NCBI GenBank assembly: GCA_002269645.1
Contig: NIVC01003602.1
Location: 24,598-88,597, forward strand
DNA from: Macrostomum lignano
Lineage: Eukaryota
Direction: 5' to 3'
Length of the DNA: 64,000 nucleotides
Position numbers and translations under genes: made by a program. The first letter of the stretch is position 1; each line of letters begins with the position of its first letter. The notes below the pieces were generated by a model. That model worked only from the letters and a program-made list of their open reading frames with translations. It was not told the origin of the DNA and did not search any database. Positions 470 to 57,356 of this stretch are shown piece after piece.

Positions 470-2290
470 CCTTGGTGGTGTGCCGTACCGTGAGGCCGGT
501 GGTGTTGTACACGGAGGTGTTGTAGGCCGAGCTAATATATCGAAGCTTCCTGTCCTAGTCCTGCTAGTTCTCCGACACCGTCGTTGCCAGCATATCGCCT
601 AGAGTCCGATTGTCTCGTTCGATGAAGCCGTTTCCGCTCTAATAAACAGGCGACGTGCGGGTCTTCTCAACGCCCAGCGTTCTTCTTCTCAACACCACGT
701 CGATTGCTGTTAAAACTCTCGTCTTCATTCACTTGGAGGAGGTGTCAGGCATGTTCAGGATGTAAGAATTGCCATCAGTCGTGCACGGCAGCGGCTTTTC
801 CGTGTCAATCTGCACCAGCTGCTCCGGCGCCTTCTGTATGGCCTGGTCGGATTCTTCTTAGCTAGACAGGTAGCACAGCTGGCCACCTAAAAGTAGTTCT
901 CTACGTCCCGCCGCATACCGGGCCATCAGCAGTGCTCCATCAGTCTCGCTGGCGTCCTATCGATGCCGAGATGTCCACTCTGGTTGCATGAGTGAGCCTG
1001 GTGCAGAAGGTGGGAATGACTGACCGGCCACAGACCTTCAGGACCCCGCCGAACTCACTGCAGCTTCGTCAAGCAGCTCACGAACCTGCGCTGCCCAACC
1101 CTCAGACTGACTGTCGATCTCTTCGGCCAGTACCTGGAACGCCTTGCTAAGTAGCGGATCTTCCAGTCGCTCCTCGCCGTCACCCCACCGAGGCTGCATC
1201 CGAGTGCCGGCCACCCCGCCCACCCGGCCCAGCGCATCCGGCACTACGTTGTCTATGCCACGCCGTTAGAACAGATTGAAGGAGAACTGCTGCAGAGTCG
1301 ACAACCACCACGCCAGCCAGCCCTCCGGGTCCTTCGTCGCCAACAGACCCTGCAGAGGCTTATGGTCCAAATAGACCGTGAATTTCGGGACACTCAGCAG
1401 GTACGTCCTGGAGTGCTTCAGACTCCAGACCATTGAGAGCAGCTCCCGGTCGCCTTGTTGAGGGTACGAGAGGCAAACGCCACCGGCAGCTCGGCATCTC
1501 CCTGCAGCTGGCTGAGCACAGCACCGAACTCAAACTGGCTGCTGTCGCAACCGAGCACGAACTGCTTGGTGAAATCCGGTAATCTTAGCACCGAGGCCGT
1601 CGTCAGGTTGTTTTTAAGCTCATTGAACGCCCACTCGCAGTTGCTGTTTCAGGCGAAGTCCCTCAATTTCAGGCTGAAATCATGCAGGACCCTTGTAGGC
1701 TGGCTGAAGCTTTTGATGAAACGGCGGTAGAAACCCAGCATACCGAGAAACCGCTTCACCTCCTCCTCTATCGTTGAACTAAGCATGATGCGAATCACCT
1801 CAAACTTGCCAGAGTCAGGTGCATCATGCTGATCAGGTATCCCAGGTACAGCACCGATTTTCGCTTTGTTCAGTTTGAGTCCCACGCTTCTCAAGCGTCG
1901 AAAAACATGATGGACCAAGCCTCAACAAGTACTCGTCGAACGTACCGCTGATGACCACCAGGAGAACATCGACTCCCATGACAGACTAGACATGACCAGC
2001 TCCATAAGCCACAGAAACGTTGCACATTCCGAAGCCCATCTTGCAGAACTACATCAGGCCGCGGTTCGAATAGAACGCAGTCTTGAACCGGTCCTCTTGC
2101 GCCACCTCCATCTGATGGTAGCACTGTCGACAGTCAATGGTGGAGAACCAGGAGTATCCGAACAGCGCGTCCTTGATCGTGCAGACATTCAGCTGTCGCT
2201 AGTCCTTGCAGAGTCGGTTGTCGCTGTTCTTCTTGAGCACCAGCAGCAGGTTCGATGATGCCGCTGTCCAGCATCTGACCGATTTTCTTG
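470..2290 (-). mobile_element. Degenerate Ty3/Gypsy LTR-retrotransposon pol fragment (RT - RNase H - integrase) with stops, frameshifts and deletions
   Basis: Minus-strand translation gives RT motifs (SNLLLVLKKNSDNRLCKD*RQLN; FSTIDCRQCYHQMEVAQEDRFKTAF; FRRLRSVGLKLNKAK), connection/RNase H (EVKRFLGMLGFYRRFIK; LRLPDFTKQFVLGCDSS; PVAFASR; FTVYLDHKPL) and integrase (EQLVQIDTEKPLPCTTDGNSYIL; NGFIERDNRTLGDML; AYNTSVYNTTG). Order RT-RH-IN is Gypsy-type. YxDD motif not found; no LTR pair identified. Confidence 0.9.
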
Positions 2291-6369: not shown

Positions 6370-6800
<431 letters not shown>

Positions 6801-6819
6801 CACTCTCTCACACGCTCAC

Positions 6820-7120
6820 ACAGGGTGTACAGTCACCTTGACATCTTATCATCAGACATGTGCCATTCGGGGATTTGATTCTCGATCCCATTGGAATAAT
6901 TTGTGTCCTTGAGCAAGACACTTAACTCTACATTGCTTCAGCTCACCCAGCTGTAAAATGGGTGCCAGCATTAGCTGGGGTAATTGAGGGTGTGTGTAGC
7001 GACCCCCCAGTCCTTGGACTGAACAGCCGTACGCAGCCTTCAGATGCGCCGCGCAATAGCTGCGGCTGAGCTGTCGGTAGCACATCTGGCTTAATTGGTG
7101 GAGGTGTAATCAATTATTAT
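6820..7120 (+). mobile_element. SINE-like element with conserved central domain
   Basis: TTGTGTCCTTGAGCAAGACACTTAACTC...CACCCAGCTGTAAAATGGGTGCC resembles the conserved core of widespread metazoan tRNA-derived SINEs; ends in an ATTATTATT tail. Family assignment from memory, not from a search. Confidence 0.6.
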
Positions 7121-8438: not shown

Positions 8439-12931
<4,493 letters not shown>

Positions 12932-15900
12932 GGCAACGACCGGGTGGCGCGGTTCTTCACTGAAATCGGCAAAGGACCATTATATTGTAAAGTAATTCAC
13001 GATATATGTATATTTCATGCATATCTTATAGCAAATATTTATTTGAACTATATCACTTAATAGCTATTTTATAATTATCACAGTGATATTATAACTATTT
13101 TAGTGATAGTTCATCTACAGACACTGAAAATCTCTTCTTGTATCAAAACTGAAGAACCATCAGGCATATGTGCATCTAACCAGTTCTCTTCAAAAGTTTG
13201 AAGTTGTGTGCTAAATAAGAATCTCACAAAGAAGAAGTTATCGTTCCTGTAAAATGTATTGTAGTATCTACCAATTTCATTTAAAAATAAAGTCGACATT
13301 CATTAGTTCAAATCATATATATTATTACATAAAAATCTTAAAGCAACAGAACAGAATGTCCACACTCCTTAATTCAATTATATTTTTTATATGATGATAT
13401 TAGAGATTGGAGATTAATATTTAGTGAATAAGTTTCAGAAATAACTTTATATATTTCTGCTTCGGAGAAGATACACATATCGGAGAAAATGCAAAACGTA
13501 ATACAGATAGTATTATAGTATTGATAATCATCACAATAAAATTTTCAGCTATTTTGAATCCTTAATTATTTCCTTGATATCTATCCATTGCTATGGCTGT
13601 GCTACCTGCCAAGAAAAAGCTTAAAACTAAAAAAGTCATATATGAATATATAAAATAGTACGAGTATATAGTTCCCGTCCCGTTATTTTGCTACTTTAGT
13701 TGAATATAGAACCCATTCAAGAATTCCATCTTATAAAATCGAAGTCATTTTTGTACTCAGAAATCGATCGCATCCGGTCGCAATGCAACTAACAACCAAA
13801 TAAAATATTTTGTTTAATAAAGAAAACAAAAAGAAAACTAACGAAAGTCGCAATTTATGCTTTTACTTTTTTTGCAGCATTGTAACTCGCAGACTGTTTT
13901 TTGGCTTTGTTTTACTCGTAATATACTAAAGCCCGTTGAATATGTTTCAAACTACGAAGTCATACACAGCTCAGCTCAGCGCAAGTAAGTCGTTCAAAAT
14001 TTTAAAAGTTTCAGCTTTCATCCAATAAAAAGTTTTCTTTCATCCATCTTTTCACTGCAAAGCCACTTTGAAATTTTTTTCCATGCTTTGAAATATCAAA
14101 TAGTATTTTTTACTAATAAACGAATACTCAAATGACGTTTATGCTTAAAGAGCGTATTAAATCGATATTAATATTATTATTATTATTATTATTATCATTA
14201 TTATTATTAAATCGAATTACATTCAATGGCGTAGTCACTTTCAGAATCTTGTGGGATATCGGTTTGAGACCATGAAATCACTTGTAAAGGATAAATACTC
14301 AGAAAATACTCGATTTATGAAACACAGCTTGGACACAATTCTGATCGAATTGACGACTCTCTGTATTTGCAGAAAATAAATTTAAGTTGAATTTAAATTG
14401 AATGAAGCGCGCAGAAATTTTAAATCAGCAGGTAGAAGTTTTGCAGGTGTGTTCAGTGTAATAAAAAGAAGACCAATGCAAATGCCGCAAGCGGACGCGC
14501 GTGCTTGCGCAAAGGCGACAGGATTAATTTGATACAAGGGTATTGGGGAAAGCGCGGCGCGCCACCGCAAGACGCGAAAGCAACTTGCGATGCATCTGAA
14601 TTGCGATTTGGATCTGGCTGCAGGCCGCCGCCCGCCAGCTACATTGGGGCAATATGAGATTTGCTGGAATCCCAGACGACCCATTTGAACTGCGTGTTTC
14701 GGGGGTGGCGGCCGGTTGCTTTTTTTGCAACGGCTGGCAGTGGCGGCGCGCGCAAAAAGAGCCTGAAGGAGCGAACGGTAGAGCTGGGAGCGGAAACGGC
14801 CCTCGGGGGAGGGGAGGGGGGTGGTAGGGGGAATTGCGGGTTGGCATGCGAAGCCTTGGAATCAGAGTTCCTCAGACAGCTTCCTTTCCTAATTTCCCCG
14901 AGCCTCGCTCGCAGCGCGCGCCGCACCATCTTATTCCTTAGCTGCTGCTGCTGCATGGGCTGTAGGGCTCTTGCCCTAGGGCTCTAGGGCCGCCGCCGCC
15001 GCCGCTGCCGCCACCCGGCCAGCCCCACCCCCTGCCCCTACACTTTCAGCGCGCTGCGTGTCCCCGGGTCCCATTCCGCGCATCCCCCCCCCCTGGCCGG
15101 CTGTCCGTCTCTCCCACCCCTTCCACCCCCTAAACCAAGCCAAGACTTCAAATTGTTTGGCCGTGCGGCGCTGCCGCGGCGACTCGCGGCTGTGCCGGCC
15201 GGCCGGCCGCATCTATTTGACGAGCAACGCGCGGAGCCCGGCGGCCCCCCGCGCGGGTAGGTGAAGTGAAGAGGAAACTGCGAAGGCTAGAGAAAAAAAT
15301 AAGCTATAGGCCTATATGACTAGGCTAGCCCAGCTAGGTATATAGCCAGAGCTGGGCATCTCAATGACGCGCGGGCGGCCAGTAAAAAGGGGGTGGATGA
15401 AGTGAGCGAGAGCGCCCCGCAGAGGTGACGACAACGTATAGAATGGAGTGGACAGGCCCCTGGCCAAAGAGAGAAGAGAGACAGACGCAGCGGCTTTAGT
15501 AGCCATTTGCCAAACCCGGATCCACAGCTTAGCTGGGATCGTTTCTCTCCTCTGCACCCGACCTTCCTCCTCCCTCCGGAGGAGGGGGGACGGGCGGGCG
15601 CTCGCGCGTCGTCGTCAGGCCGGCACTCAGGGCTGATCGCGCGCCTCGCCCCGGGCCCGCATCCGTATGCGGCAGCGGGAACAGAATATTAACTAACTAG
15701 CTAATAGCTGCTGCGGGCCTCCAGTCTGTCTACGTGAAGCTTTGGCTCACAGTGAGAGCAGAGAGGCCAGGCCAGGCATTTGGGTTGGGCGGGGCAGAGT
15801 TCGCCGATTAGGGATTTAGGAGCAGCGCCGCTGCTGCCGGCTTGGCTGCTGCCCCGCACTGCTGGCAGCACTGTCAGAGGCTGAGAGCGGGATGGACTTA

Positions 15901-18225: not shown

Positions 18226-18863
18226 AACAAGTTTATTACACTTGTCTTAGGCGATAATATTCATGAATTTATCCTGAAATGCTGGATTAATTTTTTATTT
18301 TGTACAGAAAGAGATGCCATAATGAATAAGAGTAAAATAATGCATTGTTTTGCTTAAAACTGATTAAAGCATTGAAGCAATTCACAGGCAATCACGCGTG
18401 AATTGTGATTAAAATAGCATGTTTTGACCGGGATATGCCAAATAAAAAGCAGCAATTGAATTTGACTGCAATTATTATCAGACAGAATGCTAATGTACAC
18501 GAATTTTGAGAAGTTCAAAATTTACAACTGACAGACACAGATAACAGCGATAGGGATAGTTTGAGAACAAAGGATTTCACATAAATGCTACAAGTGACGA
18601 GAAACTATGCTACAAACAGAGATTTAGAAACTGTTTAAATTATTTACATAAATATCGATATTTGTTAATAAGTAGCAACACTTGGAACGAAATTTGACAA
18701 CAACAATTTAATTGAAGCTTGAATGTCAAAGATATTGTACTAATAGAGACTTAAGGGATTAAAGATTTGCCATTTACAAGAAATCGATTGCTATTGAATC
18801 CTTTCTAATCTGTGTACAACATAGCAATTTGCCGTAGGTTCGGTCATCAGGTACAAAAAGCAG

Positions 18864-37241: not shown

Positions 37242-40200
37242 CTAACTAACTAACTATCTAACTAACTAACTATCTAACTAACTAACTATCTAACTAAAAC
37301 AGAAATGATTATAAATACTTCAGAGACTCAAGCACTAATCTGAGTTGCAAGCAACCAGCAAATCTCACCAATTAAACTAGTTGAAGGCGCATTAACAGCA
37401 AGTCCTGTCGATGCTGCACTGTGTGGTTCACTGGTTACCAATGGAGGCAGGGCAACTGTGGTAGCCCAAGGGTCGCCGAATCCCAGGCCCGCTGAGAAAT
37501 ATAAACAGATAATGTTTCGTATGACAAGTGCATTCTACATATCGGAAACAAAAAAGGCCGTTCACCTATGAAAAATCGACCAACCTTAAACATACTACTT
37601 ACATGTCCCAATTTGCGCACCGAACGGACTCGAGTCCCACGGCTCGAATGAGTCTGCAATTTGAAGACAGAATGGACTAGTGGACAATTCAAATCGTTTA
37701 AGGCATTAAATTATATAAATTATCATAAGGCGATTAAAGCATAATCAATGTCCGCGGCTTTGATAAAAAAATTGGCTCTCTAGACTTTAAGAATACTGGC
37801 GCCACTTTGATGGCACTAGCGCAACTTTGATGACACTGGAGCCACTTTGATGCACTAGCGCCCCTTTTAAGACACTAGCGCCACTTTCGAAGACACTAGT
37901 GCCATTTTTGAAAACACTAGCGCCAATTTTAAGACACTAGCGCCATTTTTGAAGACACTAGCGCCATTTTTAAAGACATTAGCGCCATTTTTGAAGACAC
38001 TAGCGCCATTTTTAAGACATTAGCGCCATTTTTGAAGACATTAGCACCATTTTTGTAAACACTAGCGCCATTTTTTAAGACATTAGCACCATTTTTAAAG
38101 ACACTAGCGCCATTTTTGAAGACACTAGCGCCATTTTTTTAGACATTAGCGCCATTTTTGAAGACACTAGCGCCATTTTTGAAGACACTAGCGCCATTTT
38201 TAAGACATTAGCGCCATTTTTAAAGACATTAGCGCCATTTTTGAAGACACTAGCGCCATTTTTGAAGACACTAGCGCCATTTTTCAGACATTAGCGCCAT
38301 TTTTCAAGACATTAGCGCCATTTTTAAAGACATTAGCGCCATTTTTGAAGACATTAGCACCATTTTTGAAGACACTAGCGCCATTTTTGAAGACACTAGC
38401 GCCATTTTTAAAGACATTAGCACAATTTTTAAGAAACTAGCGCCATTTTTGAAGACACTAGCGCCAGTTTTGAAGACACTAGCGCCATTTTTTGAAGACA
38501 CTATCGCCATTTCTAAGAAACTAGCGCCATTTTTAAAGACACTAGCGCCATTTTTGAAGACATTAGCGCCATTTTTGAAAACACTAGCCACTGAAAATGC
38601 CTAGCAACTCACCAGCGCACAAATCTGGAGGCTCTGGTGGCAATTCAGCGGTGTCGCAGTCAGGTCTGGAAGTGGCACCAACATTAGAGGCTGAGCCGAT
38701 GCCCTCGAAGGCTGATGCTGACCAAGGATCTGGCGCGTTGGCTGGCGCGGCCGAGAGCGACACGTCGATTTGGCTCAGGTAGTCCACCTGGTTAATTGAC
38801 ATTTTAATAAGCGAGACATGCTACTTATTAGTAATATTAATTTAACGAAGTTTTTAGTAAATAACACAAAAAACATGTTTACACACATTGAAATGTGTTA
38901 GAAAAGTCTACAAGTAACTTAAACGCGCCCTAGACGCTAAAAGTTGCGCTTCATTAGCCCTACAATAAGCGAGCAAAACTAGTGAGAAAAAATGGCAACC
39001 ATATAATAAAACCATAAGCTTACATCTTGCTGCTGCTGTTTTGTGTTGGAATTTTCGCCTCTTTCGCGTCTCTGAAATAATTTACCAAAGAAATTTATTC
39101 TATATTAAGCCAAATTAAAGTCACTCTGATTAAACAAATTCACACAGGCGACAATTAATTGAAAACAGCAAATCATGAACAAAATATTGACAATATGAAT
39201 TATAACACCCTGAAATAGACAAGACATGCGTACAAGTGATACAGAAATTCAGATTATTATATCCAATACAAAATTTGTTGTACAGAATAACATCTACAAC
39301 TTGCATGCAAGTGGCAGGAGTCTTATCAATAAATTATCCAGTGCAAATTTTCAGTGCAGCAACCAACAGTGAAAAATGCTTTATGCAGGATGACAATTGC
39401 GAAATCCGGAAACAGTCTTCAATACTGCTGGAGTAAGTTAGGAGATAGCAAGTGGTGTGGAGAGGCAGGGAGTGAGGTGGCTGAGGGGATGGGTGGGGAG
39501 GGGCAGGGAGTGAGGTGGCTGCGGGGATGGGTGTGGAGGGGTAGGAGTGAGGTGGCTGAGGGGATGGGCGGGGAGGGGCAGGGAGTGAGGTGGCTGCGGG
39601 GATGGGTCTAGAGGAGTAGGAGTGAGGTGGCTGCGGGGATGGGTATGGAGGGGCAGGGAGTGAGGTGGCTGCGGGGATGGGTATGGAGGGGCAGGGAGTG
39701 AGGTGGCTGCGGGGATGGGTGTGGAGGGGTAGGAGTGAGGTGGCTGCGGGGATGGGTGTGGAGGGGTAGGAGTGAGGTGGCTGCGGGGATGGGTGGGGAG
39801 GGGCAGGAGTGAGGTGGCTGCAAGGATGGGTGGGGAGGGGCAGGGAGTAAGGTGGCTGCGGGGATGGGTGGGGAGGGGCAGGAGTGAGGTGGCTGCAGGG
39901 ATGGGTGGGGAGGGGCAGGGAGTGAGGTGGCTGCGGGAATGGGTATGGAGGGGCAGGGAGTGAGGTGGCTGCGGGAATGGGTGGGGAGGGGCATGGAGTG
40001 AGGTGGCTGCAAGGATGGGTGGGGAGGGGCAGGGAGTAAGGTGGCTGCGGGGAAGTGGTGTGGAGAGGCAGGTAGTGAGGTGGCTGTGGGGAAGTGGTAT
40101 GGAGAGGCAGGGAGTGAGGTGGCTTCAGGGTTAGGTGGATCTGTAGCGTACAGTGAATAAAATCCAGTGAAACGGACAAAACTGACACGATACAGACAAT

Positions 40201-41983
40201 AAAATCTTCAATAAAACCTAATTGAAGATGCAAAGCGGTTACTGTATTTCGAATATTTTAAAATCTGAAACTTTTTAAATTGTCTACAGATGTTAAAATT
40301 TGAAAAATGTCAGAACAAAGCAGAGTGTTTAGTGCACTATACACAAGGCAGAGGACTTACTACTCCTGTAGAATTGAGCGGCGGCGGCATGCGAAGTGGC
40401 GCTAAAGTCTAGAAGAATTAAATTCAAATTTTACTGTGCAAAAATATTCTATCGCGCAAATATTAAATAATAGTACTATCAGTAGAGAGGCCATAAAACA
40501 ATAAAACCATTGGAATACAAAAACTGTAAAAAATATAATCATAGACAATAGACAAGTTACAATAACTTCGCACCTGTTCTTCCAGTCTGCTTGCCTCAAG
40601 TACGCTCTGTAGTCGAAGCTCCTCGCGTTGCTGCTCTTCCTGGCGTAAATTGTACTCTTCGCGCGATACTTGCAAAGCTATTTCTAATTCTAAGTCGGCA
40701 TCGATTGCGTCATCTGGAGCGGCAGGCAGAGGCTGCTTTGATTCCGCCTGCGGTGGCTGCTGCGACTGTCGCGGCGGTGAGTACGGAATATCTCGACTGT
40801 CGCCTCGCATTCTATTTTTAGCTTTGATAGCGCTGGCCCGTTCGGATTTTAATCGGTCAGGATCTTCTAAGAGGGCTATTAGCTTTGTAGCTTTGTCGCG
40901 AATGCTCTGAGCCGGATCTCTAGAAAGGACGGACGAATGAAGAATCAAGTTGAGTAGGTGGTTTGGCTGATGTAAAATTGACGTCTTATGGCTAGGCCGG
41001 TGTAGGATAGAGGGTTGCGGACTGGGGCAAGGGAAGGAGTGAGGTGGCTGCAGGATTGAGGGGTTGCAGACTGGGGCAGGGAAGGAGTGAGGTGGCTGTA
41101 GGATTGAGGGGTTGCAGACTGGGGCAGGGAAGGAGTGAGGTGGCTGCAGGAGGGGTTGCGGACTGGGGCAAGGGAAGGAGTGAGGCGGCTGCAGGATTGA
41201 GGGGTTGCAGACTGGGGCAGGGAAGGAGTGAGGTGGCTGCAGGATTGAGGGGTTGCAGACTGGTGCAGGGAAGGAGTGAGGTGGCTGCAGGATTGAGGGG
41301 TTGCAGACTGGTGCAGGGAAGGAGTGAGGTGGCTGCAGGATTGAGGGCTTGTGGACTGGGGCAAGGGAAGGAGTGAGGTGGCTGCAGGATTGAGGGGTTG
41401 CAGACTGGGGCAGGGAAGGAGTGAGGTGGCTGCAGGAGGGGTTGAGGACTGGGGTAAGGGAGTGAGGTGGCTGCAGAATTGAGGGGTTGCGGACTGTGGC
41501 AGGGAAGTTGTGAGGTGTCTACAGGATTGAGGGGTTGCGGCCTGGGGCAGGGAATGGGGTGGCTGCAAGATTGAACCCAATGCAAGAAAATGTATTACAT
41601 GGCGAATAGAGAAGAATTTGCATTAAATATTATTATAATTACCTCTCTTCAGAAGGGTACTCAAAGCTTGTCAGCAGCCGAAGTGTAGAAACATTTTCTC
41701 GGCACTGCCAGGCAACCTTCTCGCTGCCAGTCTTCACTAGATACTCCATCAGTACAAGGCCTTTGCAGACATGACGCCAATGCTTGGCTTTGTCTGCTAG
41801 GCGCTTCCACAGCATGGACATGATCTCAGAAAATGCTTGACTATTATAAGTCATATCTGATATTTCTGACATGAGAGCACCAGAGGGACCCCAAGGGTCA
41901 TTTGAGGTGGCTTTGCGCACCTTCACCTGGGCATCAGAGTAGTTATGCACAACATTCTTTAGGTTGCGTCGCAGGGTAGTCAT
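33989..41983 (-). CDS. EPN: Epsin (ENTH domain, UIM, DPW motifs, terminal NPF motifs), ~401 aa, 8 exons
   Basis: ENTH: MTTLRRNLKNVVHNYSDAQVKVRKATSNDPWGP...WKRL...WRHVCKGLVLMEYLVKTGSE. UIM: DADLELEIALQVSREE. DPW/EPW motifs; C-terminal NNPFI...HNPFL*. Exons 41983-41643, 40919-40574, 40408-40361, 39071-39024, 38787-38613, 37653-37603, 37491-37369, 34062-33989 are phase-compatible and sum to 1206 nt. Confidence 0.9.
34170..35998. repeat. (GTTA)n microsatellite, ~1.8 kb, with GCTA/GTTT/GATA variants
   Basis: Directly visible, in the last epsin intron. Confidence 0.98.
35998..36220 (-). mobile_element. tRNA-derived SINE-like element whose 3' end runs into the (TAAC)n tract
   Basis: B-box GGTTCGATTCC on the minus strand (36172-36182), ~170-bp body, then the microsatellite tail. 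Confidence 0.6.
36804..37297. repeat. (TAAC)n microsatellite, inverted relative to 34170-35998
   Basis: Directly visible. Confidence 0.97.
37790..38590. repeat. 21-bp minisatellite (GACACTAGCGCCATTTTTGAA) in an epsin intron
   Basis: About 37 copies. Confidence 0.96.
39450..40135. repeat. ~38-bp G-rich minisatellite (GGGAGTGAGGTGGCTGCGGGGATGGGTGGGGAGGGGCA)
   Basis: About 18 copies in an epsin intron. Confidence 0.94.
41000..41575. repeat. 48-bp G-rich minisatellite sharing the core GGAGTGAGGTGGCTGC
   Basis: About 12 copies in epsin intron 1. Confidence 0.94.
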
Positions 41984-42440
41984 AGCATTTATTTTACTAT
42001 GTCCACTAATCACTTATACTAAAAATGTGAAGACATCAATGAAGTTAGTATGAAATATATTGATTCACTTTGGTTTCATTATCTTCATAAAAGTTTAAAT
42101 ATTAGAGATTTTTTATGCAGGACTTTAATATCTTTCAAAAAAGTACTGCTTAAAACATTGCTACTATTGAAATTAAAGGATATTTCTATGAATAGAGGAT
42201 ATCTAACAAGTTTATAGATATTATATTTATTTAACATGTAGGTATATCTAGAGAGCAAATAAAAACTATTATATAAAGTACAAAATATAAAATAAATTTA
42301 AAACAAAGCTATATAAAATTTGATAATACAAGTGTTCAAAAAATTGACTATGTTTTATTCTAATAATGCTGGTAGAGTCGCTCGCTTGGCGAGAAGAATA
42401 CATAGAAAGCTTAATATCAACATTTGAATATGATTGCAAT

Positions 42441-42498
42441 TTCTAACAACTTCAACGCGTTTCGCACGCCATGGTGCATCATCAGGATTTTATTAGAA
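42441..42498 (-). ncRNA. Type I minimal hammerhead ribozyme with intact core
   Basis: Minus strand: TTCTAATAAAATC-CTGATGA-T-GCAC catggc GTGC-GAAAC-GC-GTT-GAAGTTGTTAGAA. Stem I 11 of 13 positions paired, stem II 4 bp, palindromic ACGCGT stem III, cleavage triplet GUU. Confidence 0.8.
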
Positions 42499-42988
42499 CG
42501 ATTTGAGAAATTGAGATTGAAAGCGATTGATTAAATATTGGTTTTTGCAACGTACACAGGTAAGGAGGGTAAGATTGAAAACAATTGATTACAACTTGGC
42601 TTTAACAACATACATAGGTAAAGTAGGTAGGAGAGAGAATTATAGATTGAGATTGAAAGTTAAACCAAATGTACACAATTCTTGTCCAGTGGTCAAAAGG
42701 CAGAATCAGGGGCGGTAGCTAGCTTAAGTAATTGAACATCAAGCTAAGTGTACACAGCGTGCACAACTGTGTCACTCACTGTTCAGAAAACGCGGAGAAC
42801 GTGACCTGTACCACTATGTTGTAATTGGGTGTTGAGATTCGGGGTCTGAGCTTTCGGGGTCTGAATAACCTATGTATGTTGTTAAAGCCAAGTTGTAATC
42901 AATTGTTTTCAATCTTACCTTCCTTACCTGTGTACATTGCAAAAACCAATATTTAATCAATCACTTTCAATCTCAATTTCTCAAATCG

Positions 42989-43046
42989 TTCTAATAAAAT
43001 CCTGACAATGCACCATGGCGTGGGAAACGCGTTGAAGTTGTTAGAA
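42989..43046 (+). ncRNA. Second hammerhead copy with core mutations (probably inactive)
   Basis: Same frame of sequence but CTGACAA replaces CTGATGA and GTGG replaces GTGC at the base of stem II. Confidence 0.65.
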
Positions 43047-45042
43047 ATTGCAATCATATTCAAATGTTGATATTAAGCTTTCTATTTATTCTAATAATAA
43101 CTTTGTCATTAAAATATTCTAGATTTAAAAAAATATTAGTTGGCTATACTATTGTTAATAAAGAATAATATTGAACCATTATTTAAACAGTTTATTTATA
43201 GCCCTCTAAACTCATCCCTAGTTAGGTCTAATGATTGATAGTACATTATTTTCTTAGCCTTATTTCTAATTTAAATAACTTATCTAAACTAACCAAAATA
43301 TAAAGTAAAAAGGACATTGCATTGCTAAGTAAGAAAATATAAACCTAACAAATTAAATTATTTTTTAGATAAGTAAAAGTACTAATACAATTAGTACTAG
43401 CTTAGGTGAGAGGCAAAAGAGGCTATAGCCCCTAAATGACTATTGTTCAAAGCTTTCCAAGGGATGACTATTATATCTTCTAGTATTAGCATTTTTGTGA
43501 AATTTTAGCATAATGTTGTTCTAATTCTAAAAATTTTCTAGGGGGTGACCACCTAATAAATATCCCCCTTCCTAATTAAAGGTACTGCATTATCATTAAA
43601 TATATAAATTCCCATTTAAAAATACTGATCAAATAATTAAGTTTAATTAGATACCTAAGTATGCCAATGCTTTAGTGTCTATAGCAAAATAAAAGAGAAC
43701 TATTTAATACAACTTGACCCTTGCTTATAATAGGATTTAGAATATTTAGGGCTCAAGTAATGTAGGTGTAGGCGTGTAGCTTGCTTGGAAAATAGTAAAT
43801 AAATAAAAGTAATAATAATTAACATAAAGAAAAGAACTATATTAAGGTTTCCATTGCCTATCTATTTTGTCCACAATTTTTATAATAGATAAAATGCATT
43901 AGCATTTGGCATGGTTGGGTATCTAATCAAATTCAATTAAATATTAAACTCAAATTGGTATTAAAACTTAATTATTTTAAATATTCAGGGTAATTAAAAA
44001 TAGGCATAACAGCATTAGCAAAACACTATAAACAATACATAGACATATGATACTCTATAGTCTATAGAATACTATACTTATACTATTCATACACATTATT
44101 TTAAAAAATTGAATAGCTTTATAGAATTTAATCTATCAGTATTGCCTATATTTTTCCAAGATAACACCAATAAGAATAATAAATATATTTACTTGCAATT
44201 GCATATTTCATTATACTTGCCTATGATATCTGACACCCCATGGGGCAGTAAAACTCCCTAGTAAAATTTACCCTCCATCTGTCAGCCAAAAAGGCTACAC
44301 AGTCCCCTAAACCCCTCCCTACCAGTCCCTAAAATACATGGACTGAATACATGAACACCTCTGGATACACAATCACCCCAGGTAAGACTTTGGCACCCCC
44401 AAAATGAAAACCTGGATATAACGGTGATGTTTTCAGGAAACACCTAGATATTCTAAGCTAATACAATTAATACATATGCCTATGGCTCTCCTTGTACTTT
44501 TTAAGCCTCCGCCAGTATTATAAGCGTATAAAAGTTCAAAGTAATAGGCAATAGCATATAGTTAGGTTATAGTAAAAATAGTTAAATTACTACTATTTTA
44601 CTATTTTAGTACTATTTTACTACCAAAATAGTAAAAAAAAGTTTTGGTTGGGATAAATGCAACTGTGAAAAAAAACAATTGAATAAAAATTCTGATGACA
44701 AAAAAATAAGAATGTTCGATCAGTTAAACTTCTGAAAATTTTAGTCACGCGGGACTCAGCTGAGTAAAGCGAATGCATTACTGCGTGAATGAAATATGAA
44801 CTATATTTAGCATTAAAACAGCCTTTTCCTTCAAGCTTCGCTTAGCTTTGTCGATAGTTTTTATTTTTCTTTAATTTTATGAGAATGAAATTGTTATATC
44901 GTTTGATTTCTAACCAACCAACGACGACTCTAAAAGTTTTGATTTGCAATAGTTTGAATAATTTTTTAACTGTAACTTATTCAAACAATTGAAACTTGTT
45001 CATCATAAGTCTTGATACAATCTTCCATCCCGTCTAGCGAGA

Positions 45043-46031
45043 ATGGAATCACAAACAGGTACACGTACGTATTTTTATCCAGAAATCGAATCTATATTAC
45101 TTGATTATTTAACCATTTGGAAGCCAAAGGGCTGCACTGCAGGCCATACCAAAACGGCCCAAAAGCCCAGAGATTCAAAAATATCTATAGCATCAAAAAC
45201 CATATCCCCAGTCACTAACGCAACTGCCCAGAATGGCCACTGTATGACCCAGTATGCAGGCCATGACTAATTTAAAGAAGTGGGCACCAAGTGGTTAAGG
45301 TCTAATGATTTCTTACAAAACTTAAGCAAGAAGTGCCTATTCCTTCAGAGTCGTAATCACCATTTTATACCGGGCCGGGTTGGGAGTCGAATTGGCCGAT
45401 TGGGTCACATACGTCATTGGAGGGGTTACACATAGGGCTTGTGAGACAAAATTGGTTGCGCAGTGTAATTTTTGCTTAGTGGCCCGAATTGTGGAATCCC
45501 TGGAATGTAAATGATTTACAGATCAAGTAGCCCTGTGTATTTCAACAGTCGTCTAAAAATTGAAACTTCTCTTTTTCAGAACAACCGGAGGAGCAAAAGG
45601 AAGCCCGCGTGCTAACAGAAACAAGCCTACTCAATCTTGGCAAAGCTGTGAAGCAAGGTGACATGAAGTTGTACATGCTGCTCAATATTCCCACTGTAGA
45701 GATCGTCCGTCAGAAGGTTCGAAACGAGGAATTTAAGATGCCAGAGTACGGTGAGTAAAAAAGCGAGATAATAAAAACACAGATTCTAGATTAAACTACA
45801 TTTTGTAGCCAATACTTATTAAAACAATAATTGTTGTGAAACTACACAGGAGCCGCTCAAAAGCTTCTACTCTATTGGAAGAAGATGCGCAAGGGCGCAA
45901 AAGAGAATGACATCATCCGGGACCTGGACAATGCTCTGCGGGAGTCCGGCCAGGAAGAAATTGCCGACATTGTCAGCGATAGAAACAGAATCGATCAGGA
46001 GATCGTACCCGAGCTGTTCGTATCTGCTTGA
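45043..46031 (+). CDS. Small stand-alone death-domain-like protein, 122 aa, 3 exons (absent from the ORF track)
   Basis: Exons 45043-45058, 45580-45750, 45850-46031 (phase 1, 1; 369 nt): MESQTEQPEEQKEARVLTETSLLNLGKAVKQGDMKLYMLLNIPTVEIVRQKVRNEEFKMPEYGAAQKLLLYWKKMRKGAKENDIIRDLDNALRESGQEEIADIVSDRNRIDQEIVPELFVSA*. The LL..W and L..AL...G..EIA pattern is death-fold-like. Exon 1 is the least certain. Confidence 0.72.

Positions 46032-46635: not shown

Positions 46636-57356
<10,721 letters not shown>

What the first reader, a model, noticed from the sequence alone, without database searches (positions are those of the whole stretch)
42395..43092. Outward-facing pair of hammerhead ribozymes (one intact, one mutated) between two divergent genes
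Seen: a 225-bp inverted repeat in which each arm carries a type I hammerhead with a palindromic ACGCGT stem III. The copy on the minus strand has an intact CUGAUGA/GAAAC core and GUU site, and lies ~460 bp upstream of the epsin ATG on epsin's sense strand. The plus-strand copy facing the death-domain gene has CUGACAA and a broken stem II base pair. Known: minimal hammerheads with palindromic stem III typify Penelope-like element pseudo-LTRs, cleave best as dimers, and PLE insertions can leave inverted pLTRs. Inference: the intact copy may be retained and could cleave an epsin 5' intron or outron (a plausible acceptor lies near 42020), or be masked by the inverted arm as a dsRNA switch.
Basis: partly seen in the sequence, partly recalled or inferred. 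Interest (0 to 1): 0.75.

Follow-up and report, generated by a model that had tools for sequence, protein, structure and literature searches.

The report
Dead Penelope-like retrotransposon with hammerhead motifs
The inverted repeat with two hammerhead ribozyme motifs upstream of the epsin gene is real, but it has the standard shape of a truncated, decaying Penelope-like retrotransposon insertion, and nothing suggests the host uses it.

Summary
There is a 225-nt inverted repeat (42395-42619 / 42868-43092, 97% complementary). Each arm carries an outward-facing type-I minimal hammerhead with a loop-less palindromic ACGCGU helix III. The left copy (minus strand) has an intact core. The right copy has G8->A and C11.1->G.

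The structure matches a Penelope-like element (PLE) insertion on four points:
- two 5'-truncated 3' ends joined head to head;
- a 14-bp target-site duplication (0 of 2000 random flank pairs reach 14 nt);
- a 27-nt extension ("tail") at one end only;
- the published marks of PLE minimal hammerheads (an extra nucleotide after A9, a G10.1-C11.1 pair, a palindromic helix III).

Contigs from environmental metagenomes show the same layout many times. Outward-facing pairs are the commonest close arrangement there, and some carry one-sided tails, duplications and nearby GIY-YIG reading frames.

Four of the seven differences between the arms lie at CpG sites. UG versus CA in the core fits decay of an ancestral CG on opposite strands, so the "intact versus mutated" contrast is what neutral decay would give.

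A lone copy cannot form helix III. An epsin-sense read-through RNA would fold into a 225-bp hairpin. The idea of host co-option has no support, though without RNA data or orthologous loci it is not excluded. Rfam's hammerhead models miss this whole class.

The parts
42354..42367 (.). Left copy of the 14-bp target-site duplication, TTTATTCTAATAAT
   Evidence: Exact 14-nt direct repeat with 43085-43098. None of 2000 random pairs of AT-rich flank segments reach 14 nt; the longest was 12.
42368..42394 (-). 27-nt extension ('tail') present only at this end. On the minus strand it reads UCUCGCCAAGCGAGCGACUCUACCAGC. It is G+C-rich and contains a 5-bp hairpin.
   Evidence: It lies between the duplication and the arm and has no counterpart at the right end. 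PLE insertions often carry a 30-40-bp tail at one end only (PMC8557442), explained by two reverse-transcription start sites (PMC11167929). Comparator loci L030 and L067 show 36- and 30-nt one-sided extensions between the arm and the duplication.
42395..42619 (-). Left arm: the 3' portion of the longer, minus-sense PLE-derived copy
   Evidence: Inverted repeat I1, 225 nt, 97% complementary; alignment.
42441..42498 (-). Minimal type-I hammerhead with an intact core. CUGAUGA 42485-42479, extra U 42478, helix II 42477-42464, GAAA 42463-42460, ACGCGU palindrome, U17 at 42454.
   Evidence: Read directly from the sequence. Only descriptor hit in the window. Model R1 gives 28.3 bits, E=7.9e-6. The minimum-energy structure of two copies is a double hammerhead with an intermolecular helix III, -31.1 kcal/mol against 2 x -12.0 for separate monomers.
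42514..42660 (-). About 2.5 tandem units of 58 nt inside the element. They continue past the end of the left arm.
   Evidence: Direct repeats D1 and D8. The motif CUUUCAAUCUCAAU recurs at 42646-42660, just inside the left arm but not inside the right arm. This suggests the centre belongs to the minus-sense copy (inference).
42620..42867 (-). Unique centre of 248 nt. It is inferred to be the further 5' part of the longer minus-sense copy, up to the head-to-head junction with the shorter copy.
   Evidence: No reading frame in any of the six frames. No tRNA. Only noise-level Rfam hits. 43% G+C against 33% in the arms.
42868..43092 (+). Right arm: the shorter, plus-sense inverted copy without a tail. 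Its last 8 nt overlap the target-site duplication.
   Evidence: At least 4 of the 7 arm differences are derived on this side: CG->CA at two arm CpG sites, CG->CA in the hammerhead core, and loss of the conserved C11.1.
42989..43046 (+). Degenerate hammerhead: core CUGACAA (A8 at 43007) and G at 43023 in place of C11.1
   Evidence: Read from the sequence. Model R1 gives 11.8 bits, E=0.65, which is noise level. It fails the descriptor.
43085..43098 (.). Right copy of the 14-bp target-site duplication
41639..41983 (-). Neighbouring first coding exon of an epsin-like gene (ENTH domain). This is context, not part of the element.
   Evidence: Pfam ENTH 1.5e-37. The closest homologues are ENTH proteins at up to 70% identity over most of the query.

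Best explanation
This is an inactive remnant of one insertion made by Penelope-like element (PLE) machinery, with no function for the host.

Shown by the sequence:
- Two 5'-truncated copies of the same 3'-terminal PLE sequence lie head to head, with their 3' ends pointing outward.
- One copy is about 500 nt on the minus strand (42867->42368) and carries a 27-nt tail. The other is about 217-225 nt on the plus strand (42868->43084/43092) and has no tail.
- The whole unit is bracketed by a 14-bp target-site duplication.

Inferred, following the published model: the GIY-YIG endonuclease cut both target strands with a 14-bp stagger. Each 3'-OH then primed reverse transcription near the 3' end of the element's RNA, at the outer start site on one side (leaving the tail) and at the inner start site on the other. 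The two incomplete cDNAs were then joined.

The hammerheads are cargo of the element's terminal repeat. In an active element they are thought to work as dimers on tandem or multimeric transcripts. Here each strand has a single sense copy, helix III cannot close within one molecule, and read-through RNA would form a 225-bp duplex. The left copy is therefore predicted to be inert in cis, and the right copy is dead (G8->A, C11.1->G).

The differences between the copies fit CpG deamination. An ancestral CUGACGA would give CUGAUGA on the left, where N7 is free to vary, and CUGACAA on the right, where G8 is lost.
For: - Inverted repeat and its boundaries.
- Target-site duplication: 14 nt, 0 of 2000 null pairs as long.
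- One-sided 27-nt extension. It matches the 'tail' described in PMC8557442 and explained in PMC11167929, which also reports cleavage and extension of both DNA strands.
- PMC4209133 also reports dual minimal hammerheads 100-700 bp apart on opposite strands.
- Comparators: the pattern CUGANGA-N-G...C-GAAACGCGU-H retrieved 120 metagenome loci. Of 121 matches, 47 have a helix II of at least 4 bp, against about 5% expected by chance. Helices I and II covary.
- The model built from those comparators finds the left copy at E=7.9e-6.
- Among adjacent model hits no more than 1 kb apart in those loci, 24 pairs face outward, 9 face inward and 12 are on the same strand.
- The outward pairs sit in inverted-repeat arms of 100-175 nt. 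L030 and L067 add duplications of 11 and 15 nt plus one-sided tails of 36 and 30 nt, and the tail sequence recurs between loci.
- GIY-YIG reading frames lie next to such hammerheads in L013 and L031.
- Neutral decay: 4 of 7 arm differences are at CpG sites, and CpG observed/expected is 0.53-0.72 in the window.
- Folding: read-through RNA -418 kcal/mol as a hairpin; hammerhead fold of a monomer -9.7 against a minimum of -12.0; the minimum-energy dimer is a double hammerhead.
Against: - There is no PLE reverse transcriptase or endonuclease coding sequence in the element or elsewhere in the window. The PLE assignment therefore rests on insertion anatomy and the ribozyme class.
- The source genome and its relatives are not in the searchable collections. 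Copy number, family consensus and orthologous empty sites could not be checked, so the ancestral CG in the core is an inference.
- The tail is 27 nt, slightly under the published 30-40 bp.
- The last 8 nt of the right arm overlap the duplication, so the exact boundary is ambiguous.
- Helix I is longer (11 pairs with an internal loop) and helix II shorter (4-5 bp) than in the Schistosoma consensus.
- My comparator pattern was derived from this motif, so the model score is partly circular for the core and helix III. Helices I and II and the spacing are independent.
- No expression data exist, so host use cannot be strictly excluded.
Confidence: 0.85

Rival explanations
1. One reading: the intact left hammerhead has been retained by the host. 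It would cleave an epsin 5' intron or outron, or the inverted arm would mask it as a dsRNA switch.
For: - The left core is intact and lies on the epsin sense strand, 470 nt upstream of the ATG.
- An acceptor-like UUUUUAG lies near 42020.
- The dimer fold is thermodynamically feasible.
- Host-retained hammerheads exist elsewhere, for example intronic and 3'-UTR cases cited in PMC4209133.
Against: - Intactness is expected by chance. About 3.5 substitutions per 225-nt arm give roughly 0.5-0.8 probability that no disabling hit falls in a 15-40-nt critical set (arithmetic).
- The left copy probably also mutated, C7->U at a CpG.
- A monomer cannot form helix III, and there is no second sense copy in the window.
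- In a read-through RNA the antisense arm is made first, and a 225-bp duplex of -418 kcal/mol outcompetes a fold of about -10 kcal/mol.
- Such motifs cleave poorly in vitro (PMC4209133).
- The arrangement is the generic PLE insertion shape, so the design needs no functional explanation.
Confidence: 0.03
2. The source was not an autonomous PLE. It was a non-autonomous pLTR-derived element (related to animal non-LTR retrozymes or SINE-like hammerhead elements) mobilised in trans by PLE machinery.
For: - No coding sequence lies within the 500 nt retained.
- Internal 58-nt tandem repeats are present.
- Retrozymes are reported to derive from PLE pLTRs (bioRxiv 10.64898/2026.07.22.740005, abstract only; PMC7229834, abstract only).
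Against: - There are no tandem direct hammerhead-bearing units here, which is the defining retrozyme layout.
- A 500-nt 5'-truncated piece of a 3-4-kb PLE would also lack coding sequence.
- The two cases cannot be told apart without the family consensus.
Confidence: 0.2
3. The relic has a by-product activity. When transcribed across, the 225-bp inverted repeat forms a long hairpin RNA that feeds small-RNA or editing pathways. Alternatively, the outward-facing pLTR ends carry residual PLE promoter activity toward the two flanking genes.
For: - A near-perfect hairpin is predicted.
- PLE promoters lie in the repeat / 5'-UTR region (PMC8557442, citing Schostak 2008).
- Both arms point toward the flanking genes.
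Against: - There are no expression or small-RNA data.
- Only the 3'-most 225-500 nt are retained, and it is unknown whether a promoter lies within them.
- The sequence is decaying at CpG sites like neutral DNA.
Confidence: 0.08
4. It is a foldback or MITE-type DNA transposon whose terminal inverted repeats contain hammerhead-like strings by chance.
For: Long terminal inverted repeats flanked by a direct duplication.
Against: - The ends are asymmetric because of the 27-nt one-sided extension.
- A 14-bp duplication is longer than those of DNA transposon superfamilies (established knowledge).
- The hammerhead match is far beyond chance.
- The same layout in comparators is linked to GIY-YIG reading frames.
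Confidence: 0.02

Closest known systems
Minimal hammerhead ribozymes of Penelope-like elements (Cervera & de la Pena 2014, PMC4209133)
   Same: - Type-I topology and the CUGANGA / GAAA / UH core.
- An unpaired nucleotide between A9 and G10.1.
- A G10.1-C11.1 pair.
- A short palindromic helix III without a loop, so activity is expected only as a dimer.
- Occurrence as pairs on opposite strands 100-700 bp apart.
   Different: - Helix II is 4-5 bp, against 6-8 bp in the Schistosoma and Drosophila families.
- Helix I is long (2 + 9 bp around a 2x2 internal loop), against 4-5 bp.
- The cleavage triplet is GUU.
- Activity is untested.
PLE insertion architecture: pseudo-LTRs with an inverted 5'-truncated copy and a one-sided tail (Craig et al. 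2021, PMC8557442; Frangieh et al. 2024, PMC11167929)
   Same: - Inverted 5'-truncated copies.
- An extension at one end only.
- A target-site duplication.
- The hammerhead near the 3' end of the repeat.
   Different: - No full-length copy or reading frame lies between or beside the arms; only about 725 bp remain.
- The tail is 27 nt rather than 30-40 bp.
Outward-facing hammerhead pairs in environmental eukaryotic contigs
   Same: - Inverted-repeat arms of 59-175 nt carrying outward minimal hammerheads with ACGCGU.
- Duplications of 11-15 nt and one-sided tails of 30-36 nt in L030 and L067.
   Different: - There is no sequence similarity beyond the ribozyme.
- Their helix I is the short CUCC/GGAG type.
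- They come from other organisms. The contig names suggest termite-gut and coral samples, but this was not verified.
Animal non-LTR retrozymes (PMC7229834; bioRxiv 10.64898/2026.07.22.740005)
   Same: - Type-I hammerheads that act as dimers.
- Short non-coding repeats related to PLE pLTRs.
   Different: Retrozymes are head-to-tail tandem arrays that yield circular RNAs. Here the two copies are inverted and there is one hammerhead per strand.
Host-retained hammerheads (amniote intronic HH9/HH10; rodent Clec2 3'-UTR ribozyme), cited in PMC4209133; the details are from my own knowledge
   Same: A hammerhead on the sense strand of a host gene's non-coding region.
   Different: Those have stable helices that fold within one transcript and are conserved across species. 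Here helix III cannot close and conservation cannot be tested.

Membership tests
Hammerhead ribozyme | Conserved catalytic core: C3 U4 G5 A6 N7 G8 A9 ... G12 A13 A14 ... A15.1-U16.1, H17 | tested here: met
   The left copy has every core position. The right copy fails, with A at position 8 (43007).
Hammerhead ribozyme | Three helices around the core | tested here: inconclusive
   Helix I has 11 of 13 positions paired and helix II has 4-5 bp. Helix III (ACGCGU) has no loop and can form only between two molecules. The minimum-energy dimer is a double hammerhead.
Hammerhead ribozyme | Match to the curated Rfam hammerhead models | tested here: not met
   No hit at the gathering threshold or at E<=10. 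The same models miss all 20 best comparator minimal hammerheads, so the test cannot detect this class.
Hammerhead ribozyme | Site-specific self-cleavage | not testable with these tools
   This needs in vitro transcription of monomer and dimer constructs.
PLE minimal hammerhead (PMC4209133) | [quoted passage not shown] | tested here: met
   U at 42478 on the left and at 43009 on the right.
PLE minimal hammerhead (PMC4209133) | Conserved G10.1-C11.1 pair | tested here: met
   G42477-C42464 on the left. On the right the pair is broken (G at 43023).
PLE minimal hammerhead (PMC4209133) | Palindromic positions 15.2-16.2 / loop 3 | tested here: met
   ACGCGU in both copies. The 25 aligned comparators share it by construction of the search pattern.
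PLE minimal hammerhead (PMC4209133) | Similarity in sequence and structure to independent members of the class | tested here: met
   Model R1, built from 25 metagenome hammerheads, scores the left copy 28.3 bits, E=7.9e-6 over 64 kb on both strands. Caveat: the pattern that collected the comparators was derived from this motif.
Penelope-like element insertion | Reverse transcriptase plus GIY-YIG endonuclease reading frame | tested here: not met
   The element has no reading frame. tblastn with comparator PLE reading frames finds nothing in the window. This fits extreme 5' truncation but leaves the assignment indirect.
Penelope-like element insertion | Terminal repeats that may be inverted, formed by an adjacent 5'-truncated copy | tested here: met
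   Head-to-head arms of 225 nt with their 3' ends outward. The same layout dominates in the comparators.
Penelope-like element insertion | Extension ('tail', 30-40 bp) at one end only | tested here: met
   27 nt at 42368-42394, at the left end only. This is slightly shorter than the published range.
Penelope-like element insertion | Target-site duplication | tested here: met
   14 bp; 0 of 2000 null pairs are as long.
Penelope-like element insertion | Multicopy family in the host genome, including full-length members | not testable with these tools
   The source genome is not in the searchable collections. Exact-pattern scans of the metagenome and viral collections found no same-family copy.
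Animal non-LTR retrozyme | Head-to-tail tandem units, each with a hammerhead | tested here: not met
   There are only two copies and they are inverted. The window has no further hammerhead above noise.
Host-domesticated hammerhead | Conservation at orthologous loci, and presence inside a host transcript | not testable with these tools
   No orthologous sequence is available: the best epsin and DNAI2 protein hits over most of the query are about 70% identical. There are no RNA data.

The most novel reading that the evidence does not exclude
The outward-facing pLTR remnant next to epsin has been taken over by the host. Either transcripts start in, or run through, the left arm and are trimmed by the intact hammerhead acting in trans as a dimer. 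Or the 225-bp hairpin acts as a dsRNA or small-RNA element tuning the two flanking genes. Either case would be a PLE-derived ribozyme or hairpin domesticated as a 5' regulatory device.
Probability: 0.03. Interest if true: 0.7.

Novelty: new member of a known kind. Interest (0 to 1): 0.15.

Why it matters
The main value is for annotation. This 745-bp stretch (42354-43098) should be masked as a PLE relic, and it explains an eye-catching ribozyme pair without invoking regulation.

It is also a clean natural example of the insertion footprint predicted by the in vitro work on PLEs: both target strands primed, two start sites, and a tail on one side only.

Two practical lessons follow:
- Rfam's hammerhead models do not see loop-less PLE minimal hammerheads, so a negative Rfam scan is not evidence against them.
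- 'One intact, one mutated' in a young inverted pair should be weighed against CpG decay before selection is inferred.

Tried and rejected
- Rfam scans (whole window at gathering; 901 nt and 91 nt at E<=10) gave no hammerhead hit. I rejected this as evidence once Rfam also missed 20 clear comparator motifs.
- Exact-pattern scans for same-family copies in the metagenome and viral collections found none.
- Identifying the organism through the epsin and DNAI2 exons failed. The best hits over most of the query were about 70% identical, with lancelet, fish and flatworm proteins on top, so no orthologous locus could be fetched.
- BLAST of the element against the 120 comparator loci matched only the ribozyme's 3' half.
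- No coding potential in the centre, no tRNA or SINE-like head, and no PLE reading frame elsewhere in the window.
- The death-domain label of the right-hand gene was not confirmed.
- I considered and rejected a chance motif, a MITE or foldback element (asymmetric ends, 14-bp duplication) and a retrozyme array (no tandem units).
- The weak model hit at 18810-18858 lacks GAAA and is not counted.
Full report
**What is there**

The window holds a 225-nt inverted repeat, 42395-42619 against 42868-43092. It is 97% complementary (7 mismatches) with 248 nt between the arms. The 64-kb window has no other copy.

On the minus strand the left arm reads 5'-UUCUAAUAAAAUC CUGAUGA U GCAC-CAUGGC-GUGC GAAA CGCG U U GAAGUUGUUAGAA-3' (42498->42441). 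This is a type-I hammerhead layout:
- helix I is open-ended, with 11 of 13 positions paired around a 2x2 internal loop;
- the core is complete;
- one unpaired U follows A9;
- helix II has 4-5 bp and starts with G10.1-C11.1;
- helix III is the loop-less palindrome ACGCGU;
- the cleavage triplet is GUU.

The right arm carries the same motif on the plus strand (42989-43046), with CUGACAA (A8 at 43007) and G in place of C11.1 (43023).

The epsin-like ENTH exon (ATG at 41983, minus strand) is confirmed. The death-domain label of the right-hand gene is not.

**Is it more than chance?**

I wrote a descriptor from the published minimal-hammerhead features. It finds only the left copy in the window. 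Block-wise dinucleotide shuffles give 0.077 hits per 64 kb with helix I ignored, and 0 in 300 shuffles when helix I is required.

Rfam gives no hammerhead hit at any threshold. Rfam also misses the 20 cleanest comparator motifs, so its models do not cover this loop-less class.

**What kind of hammerhead is it?**

[quoted passage not shown] They also note pairs of motifs 100-700 bp apart on opposite strands. The left copy meets the three features that can be checked on a single sequence.

To obtain independent members, I scanned the metagenome collection with CTGANGANG-N6-24-CGAAACGCGTH.
- Of 121 matches in 120 loci, 47 have a helix II of at least 4 bp, where about 5% would be expected by chance. 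They sit in low-G+C, eukaryote-like contigs.
- Twenty-five of them align cleanly, and helices I and II show many double changes. This subset was chosen for pairing, so the enrichment among raw hits is the unbiased figure.
- A covariance model built from them finds the left copy at 28.3 bits, E=7.9e-6. The right copy scores only 11.8 bits, E=0.65.
- The core and helix III parts of that score are circular, because the pattern came from this motif. The helices and the spacing are not.

**What kind of element is it?**

Three footprints point to PLE machinery.

1. A 14-nt exact direct repeat, TTTATTCTAATAAT, brackets the unit (42354-42367 and 43085-43098). None of 2000 random pairs of local AT-rich segments reach 14 nt.
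2. A 27-nt G+C-rich extension (42368-42394) lies between the left duplication copy and the left arm. It has no counterpart on the right. PLE insertions "often" carry an inverted 5'-truncated copy and a 30-40-bp tail "present only at one end" (PMC8557442). The tail corresponds to the sequence between two internal reverse-transcription start sites, and the enzyme cleaves and extends both DNA strands in vitro (PMC11167929).
3. The hammerheads face outward. Both arms are therefore 3' ends, and the truncated 5' ends meet in the middle.

The 58-nt internal repeat continues past the left arm only. The 248-nt centre therefore most likely belongs to the minus-sense copy. That makes this copy about 500 nt with a tail, and the plus-sense copy about 220 nt without one.

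**Do other genomes show the same shape?**

Running the model over 100 comparator loci gave 132 hits. Among adjacent hits no more than 1 kb apart:

| Arrangement | Pairs |
|---|---|
| Outward-facing | 24 |
| Inward-facing | 9 |
| Same strand | 12 |

The median gap for outward pairs is 148 nt. The outward pairs lie in inverted-repeat arms of 100-175 nt.
- L030 has an 11-nt duplication and a 36-nt extension on one side.
- L067 has a 15-nt duplication and a 30-nt extension on the other side.
- The extension sequence recurs at L069 and L076.
- GIY-YIG reading frames sit beside such hammerheads in L013 and L031.

The window's element is thus a typical example of a widespread structure.

**Why is one copy intact and one mutated?**

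Four of the seven differences between the arms lie at CpG sites. Two arm sites read CG on the left and CA on the right. The core reads UG on the left and CA on the right. An ancestral CUGACGA, which is a legal core because N7 is free, would give exactly these two states by deamination on opposite strands. CpG is depleted in this genome, with observed/expected 0.53-0.72.

With about 3.5 substitutions per arm, one copy escaping a disabling hit is the expected outcome. Three of the seven differences fall inside the hammerhead, so the motif has not been spared.

**Could it work here?**

For a monomer, the hammerhead fold (-9.7 kcal/mol) is less stable than an alternative fold that sequesters the core (-12.0), and helix III cannot close. 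Two sense molecules do fold into a double hammerhead with an intermolecular helix III (-31.1 kcal/mol). This fits the published dimer idea. However, each strand of this locus has only one sense copy.

An epsin-sense read-through RNA makes the antisense arm first. It is predicted to form a 225-bp duplex (-418 kcal/mol, z = -37). Published assays found low activity for such motifs (PMC4209133). They also found no need for the hammerhead in PLE insertion in vitro, and no RNA-seq reads ending at its presumptive cleavage site (PMC11167929).

**Verdict and limits**

This is a known kind of object, a decaying PLE-type insertion with its ribozyme cargo, in a genome I could not identify. The best protein matches over most of the query are about 70% identical.

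There is no PLE coding sequence in the window, and no copy census or orthologue comparison was possible. The PLE assignment rests on anatomy and ribozyme class. I cannot tell whether the source was an autonomous PLE or a non-autonomous pLTR-derived element. Host co-option remains formally possible but unsupported.

Noticed in passing
window 18810-18858 (-) and 18450-18473: A weak hit to my minimal-hammerhead model (13.2 bits, E=0.25). It has CUGAUGA and a 5-bp helix I, but CAAA where GAAA should be. About 350 nt away, 20 of 24 nt match arm positions 42418-42441. This could be an older, decayed relic of a related element, or chance.
   Followed up: partly
L030 511-837; L067 540-933; L069 3273-3672; L076 1998-2352; L010 10548-11059; L038 5769-6080: Environmental eukaryotic contigs carry the same outward-facing hammerhead pairs in inverted-repeat arms. 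L030 and L067 show duplications of 11 and 15 nt with one-sided extensions of 36 and 30 nt. A shared extension sequence (..GGACCGTGCATCATTGTGATA..) recurs between loci.
   Followed up: partly
L031 10-900 (+) with a hammerhead at 1052-1096 (+); L013 564-1280 (-): GIY-YIG-type endonuclease reading frames next to minimal hammerheads. In L031 the frame ends about 160 nt upstream of the ribozyme on the same strand, which is the expected PLE 3' layout.
   Followed up: partly
Rfam release 15 against L003-L099 (20 loci): None of the 20 strongest loop-less minimal hammerheads reaches any Rfam hammerhead model's threshold. The inverted pair in L038 is instead matched weakly as a plant microRNA precursor (MIR2606, 51.7 bits, below its gathering score), because it forms a hairpin.
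   Followed up: yes
window 38000-38588, 39454-40139, 41004-41554, 47253-48803: Large minisatellite arrays (periods 21/125, 38/75, 48/141 and 7/14/278 nt). Three lie on the epsin side of the element, apparently within the epsin gene region, and one lies near the 3' end of the Cys-loop receptor gene. They produce long spurious low-complexity reading frames.
   Followed up: no
window 6387-6909, 11250-11800, 54250-54600: Long (CAGA)n/(GTCT)n microsatellites, one of them abutting a dynein intermediate-chain exon.
   Followed up: no
window 10698-12979 (-); 46639-47109 (-) and 50631-51197 (-): Other genes in the window: DNAI2-like axonemal dynein intermediate chain (WD40), and a Cys-loop ligand-gated ion channel (Neur_chan_LBD 1.5e-25). 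The receptor's last exon ends about 600 bp from the exon-like reading frames of the right-hand gene.
   Followed up: partly
window 45564-45755 (+) and 45840-46028 (+): Exon-like reading frames of the gene to the right of the element.
   Followed up: partly
window 43634-43667 / 43906-43939: A second, short inverted repeat (34 nt, 82%) in the same AT-rich intergenic stretch. It may be another small transposon relic.
   Followed up: no
window 1652-1921 (-): A reading-frame fragment with an LTR-retrotransposon-like reverse transcriptase / connection motif (..FLGMLGFYRRFIKSF..). Pfam gives no hit at E<=0.001.
   Followed up: no
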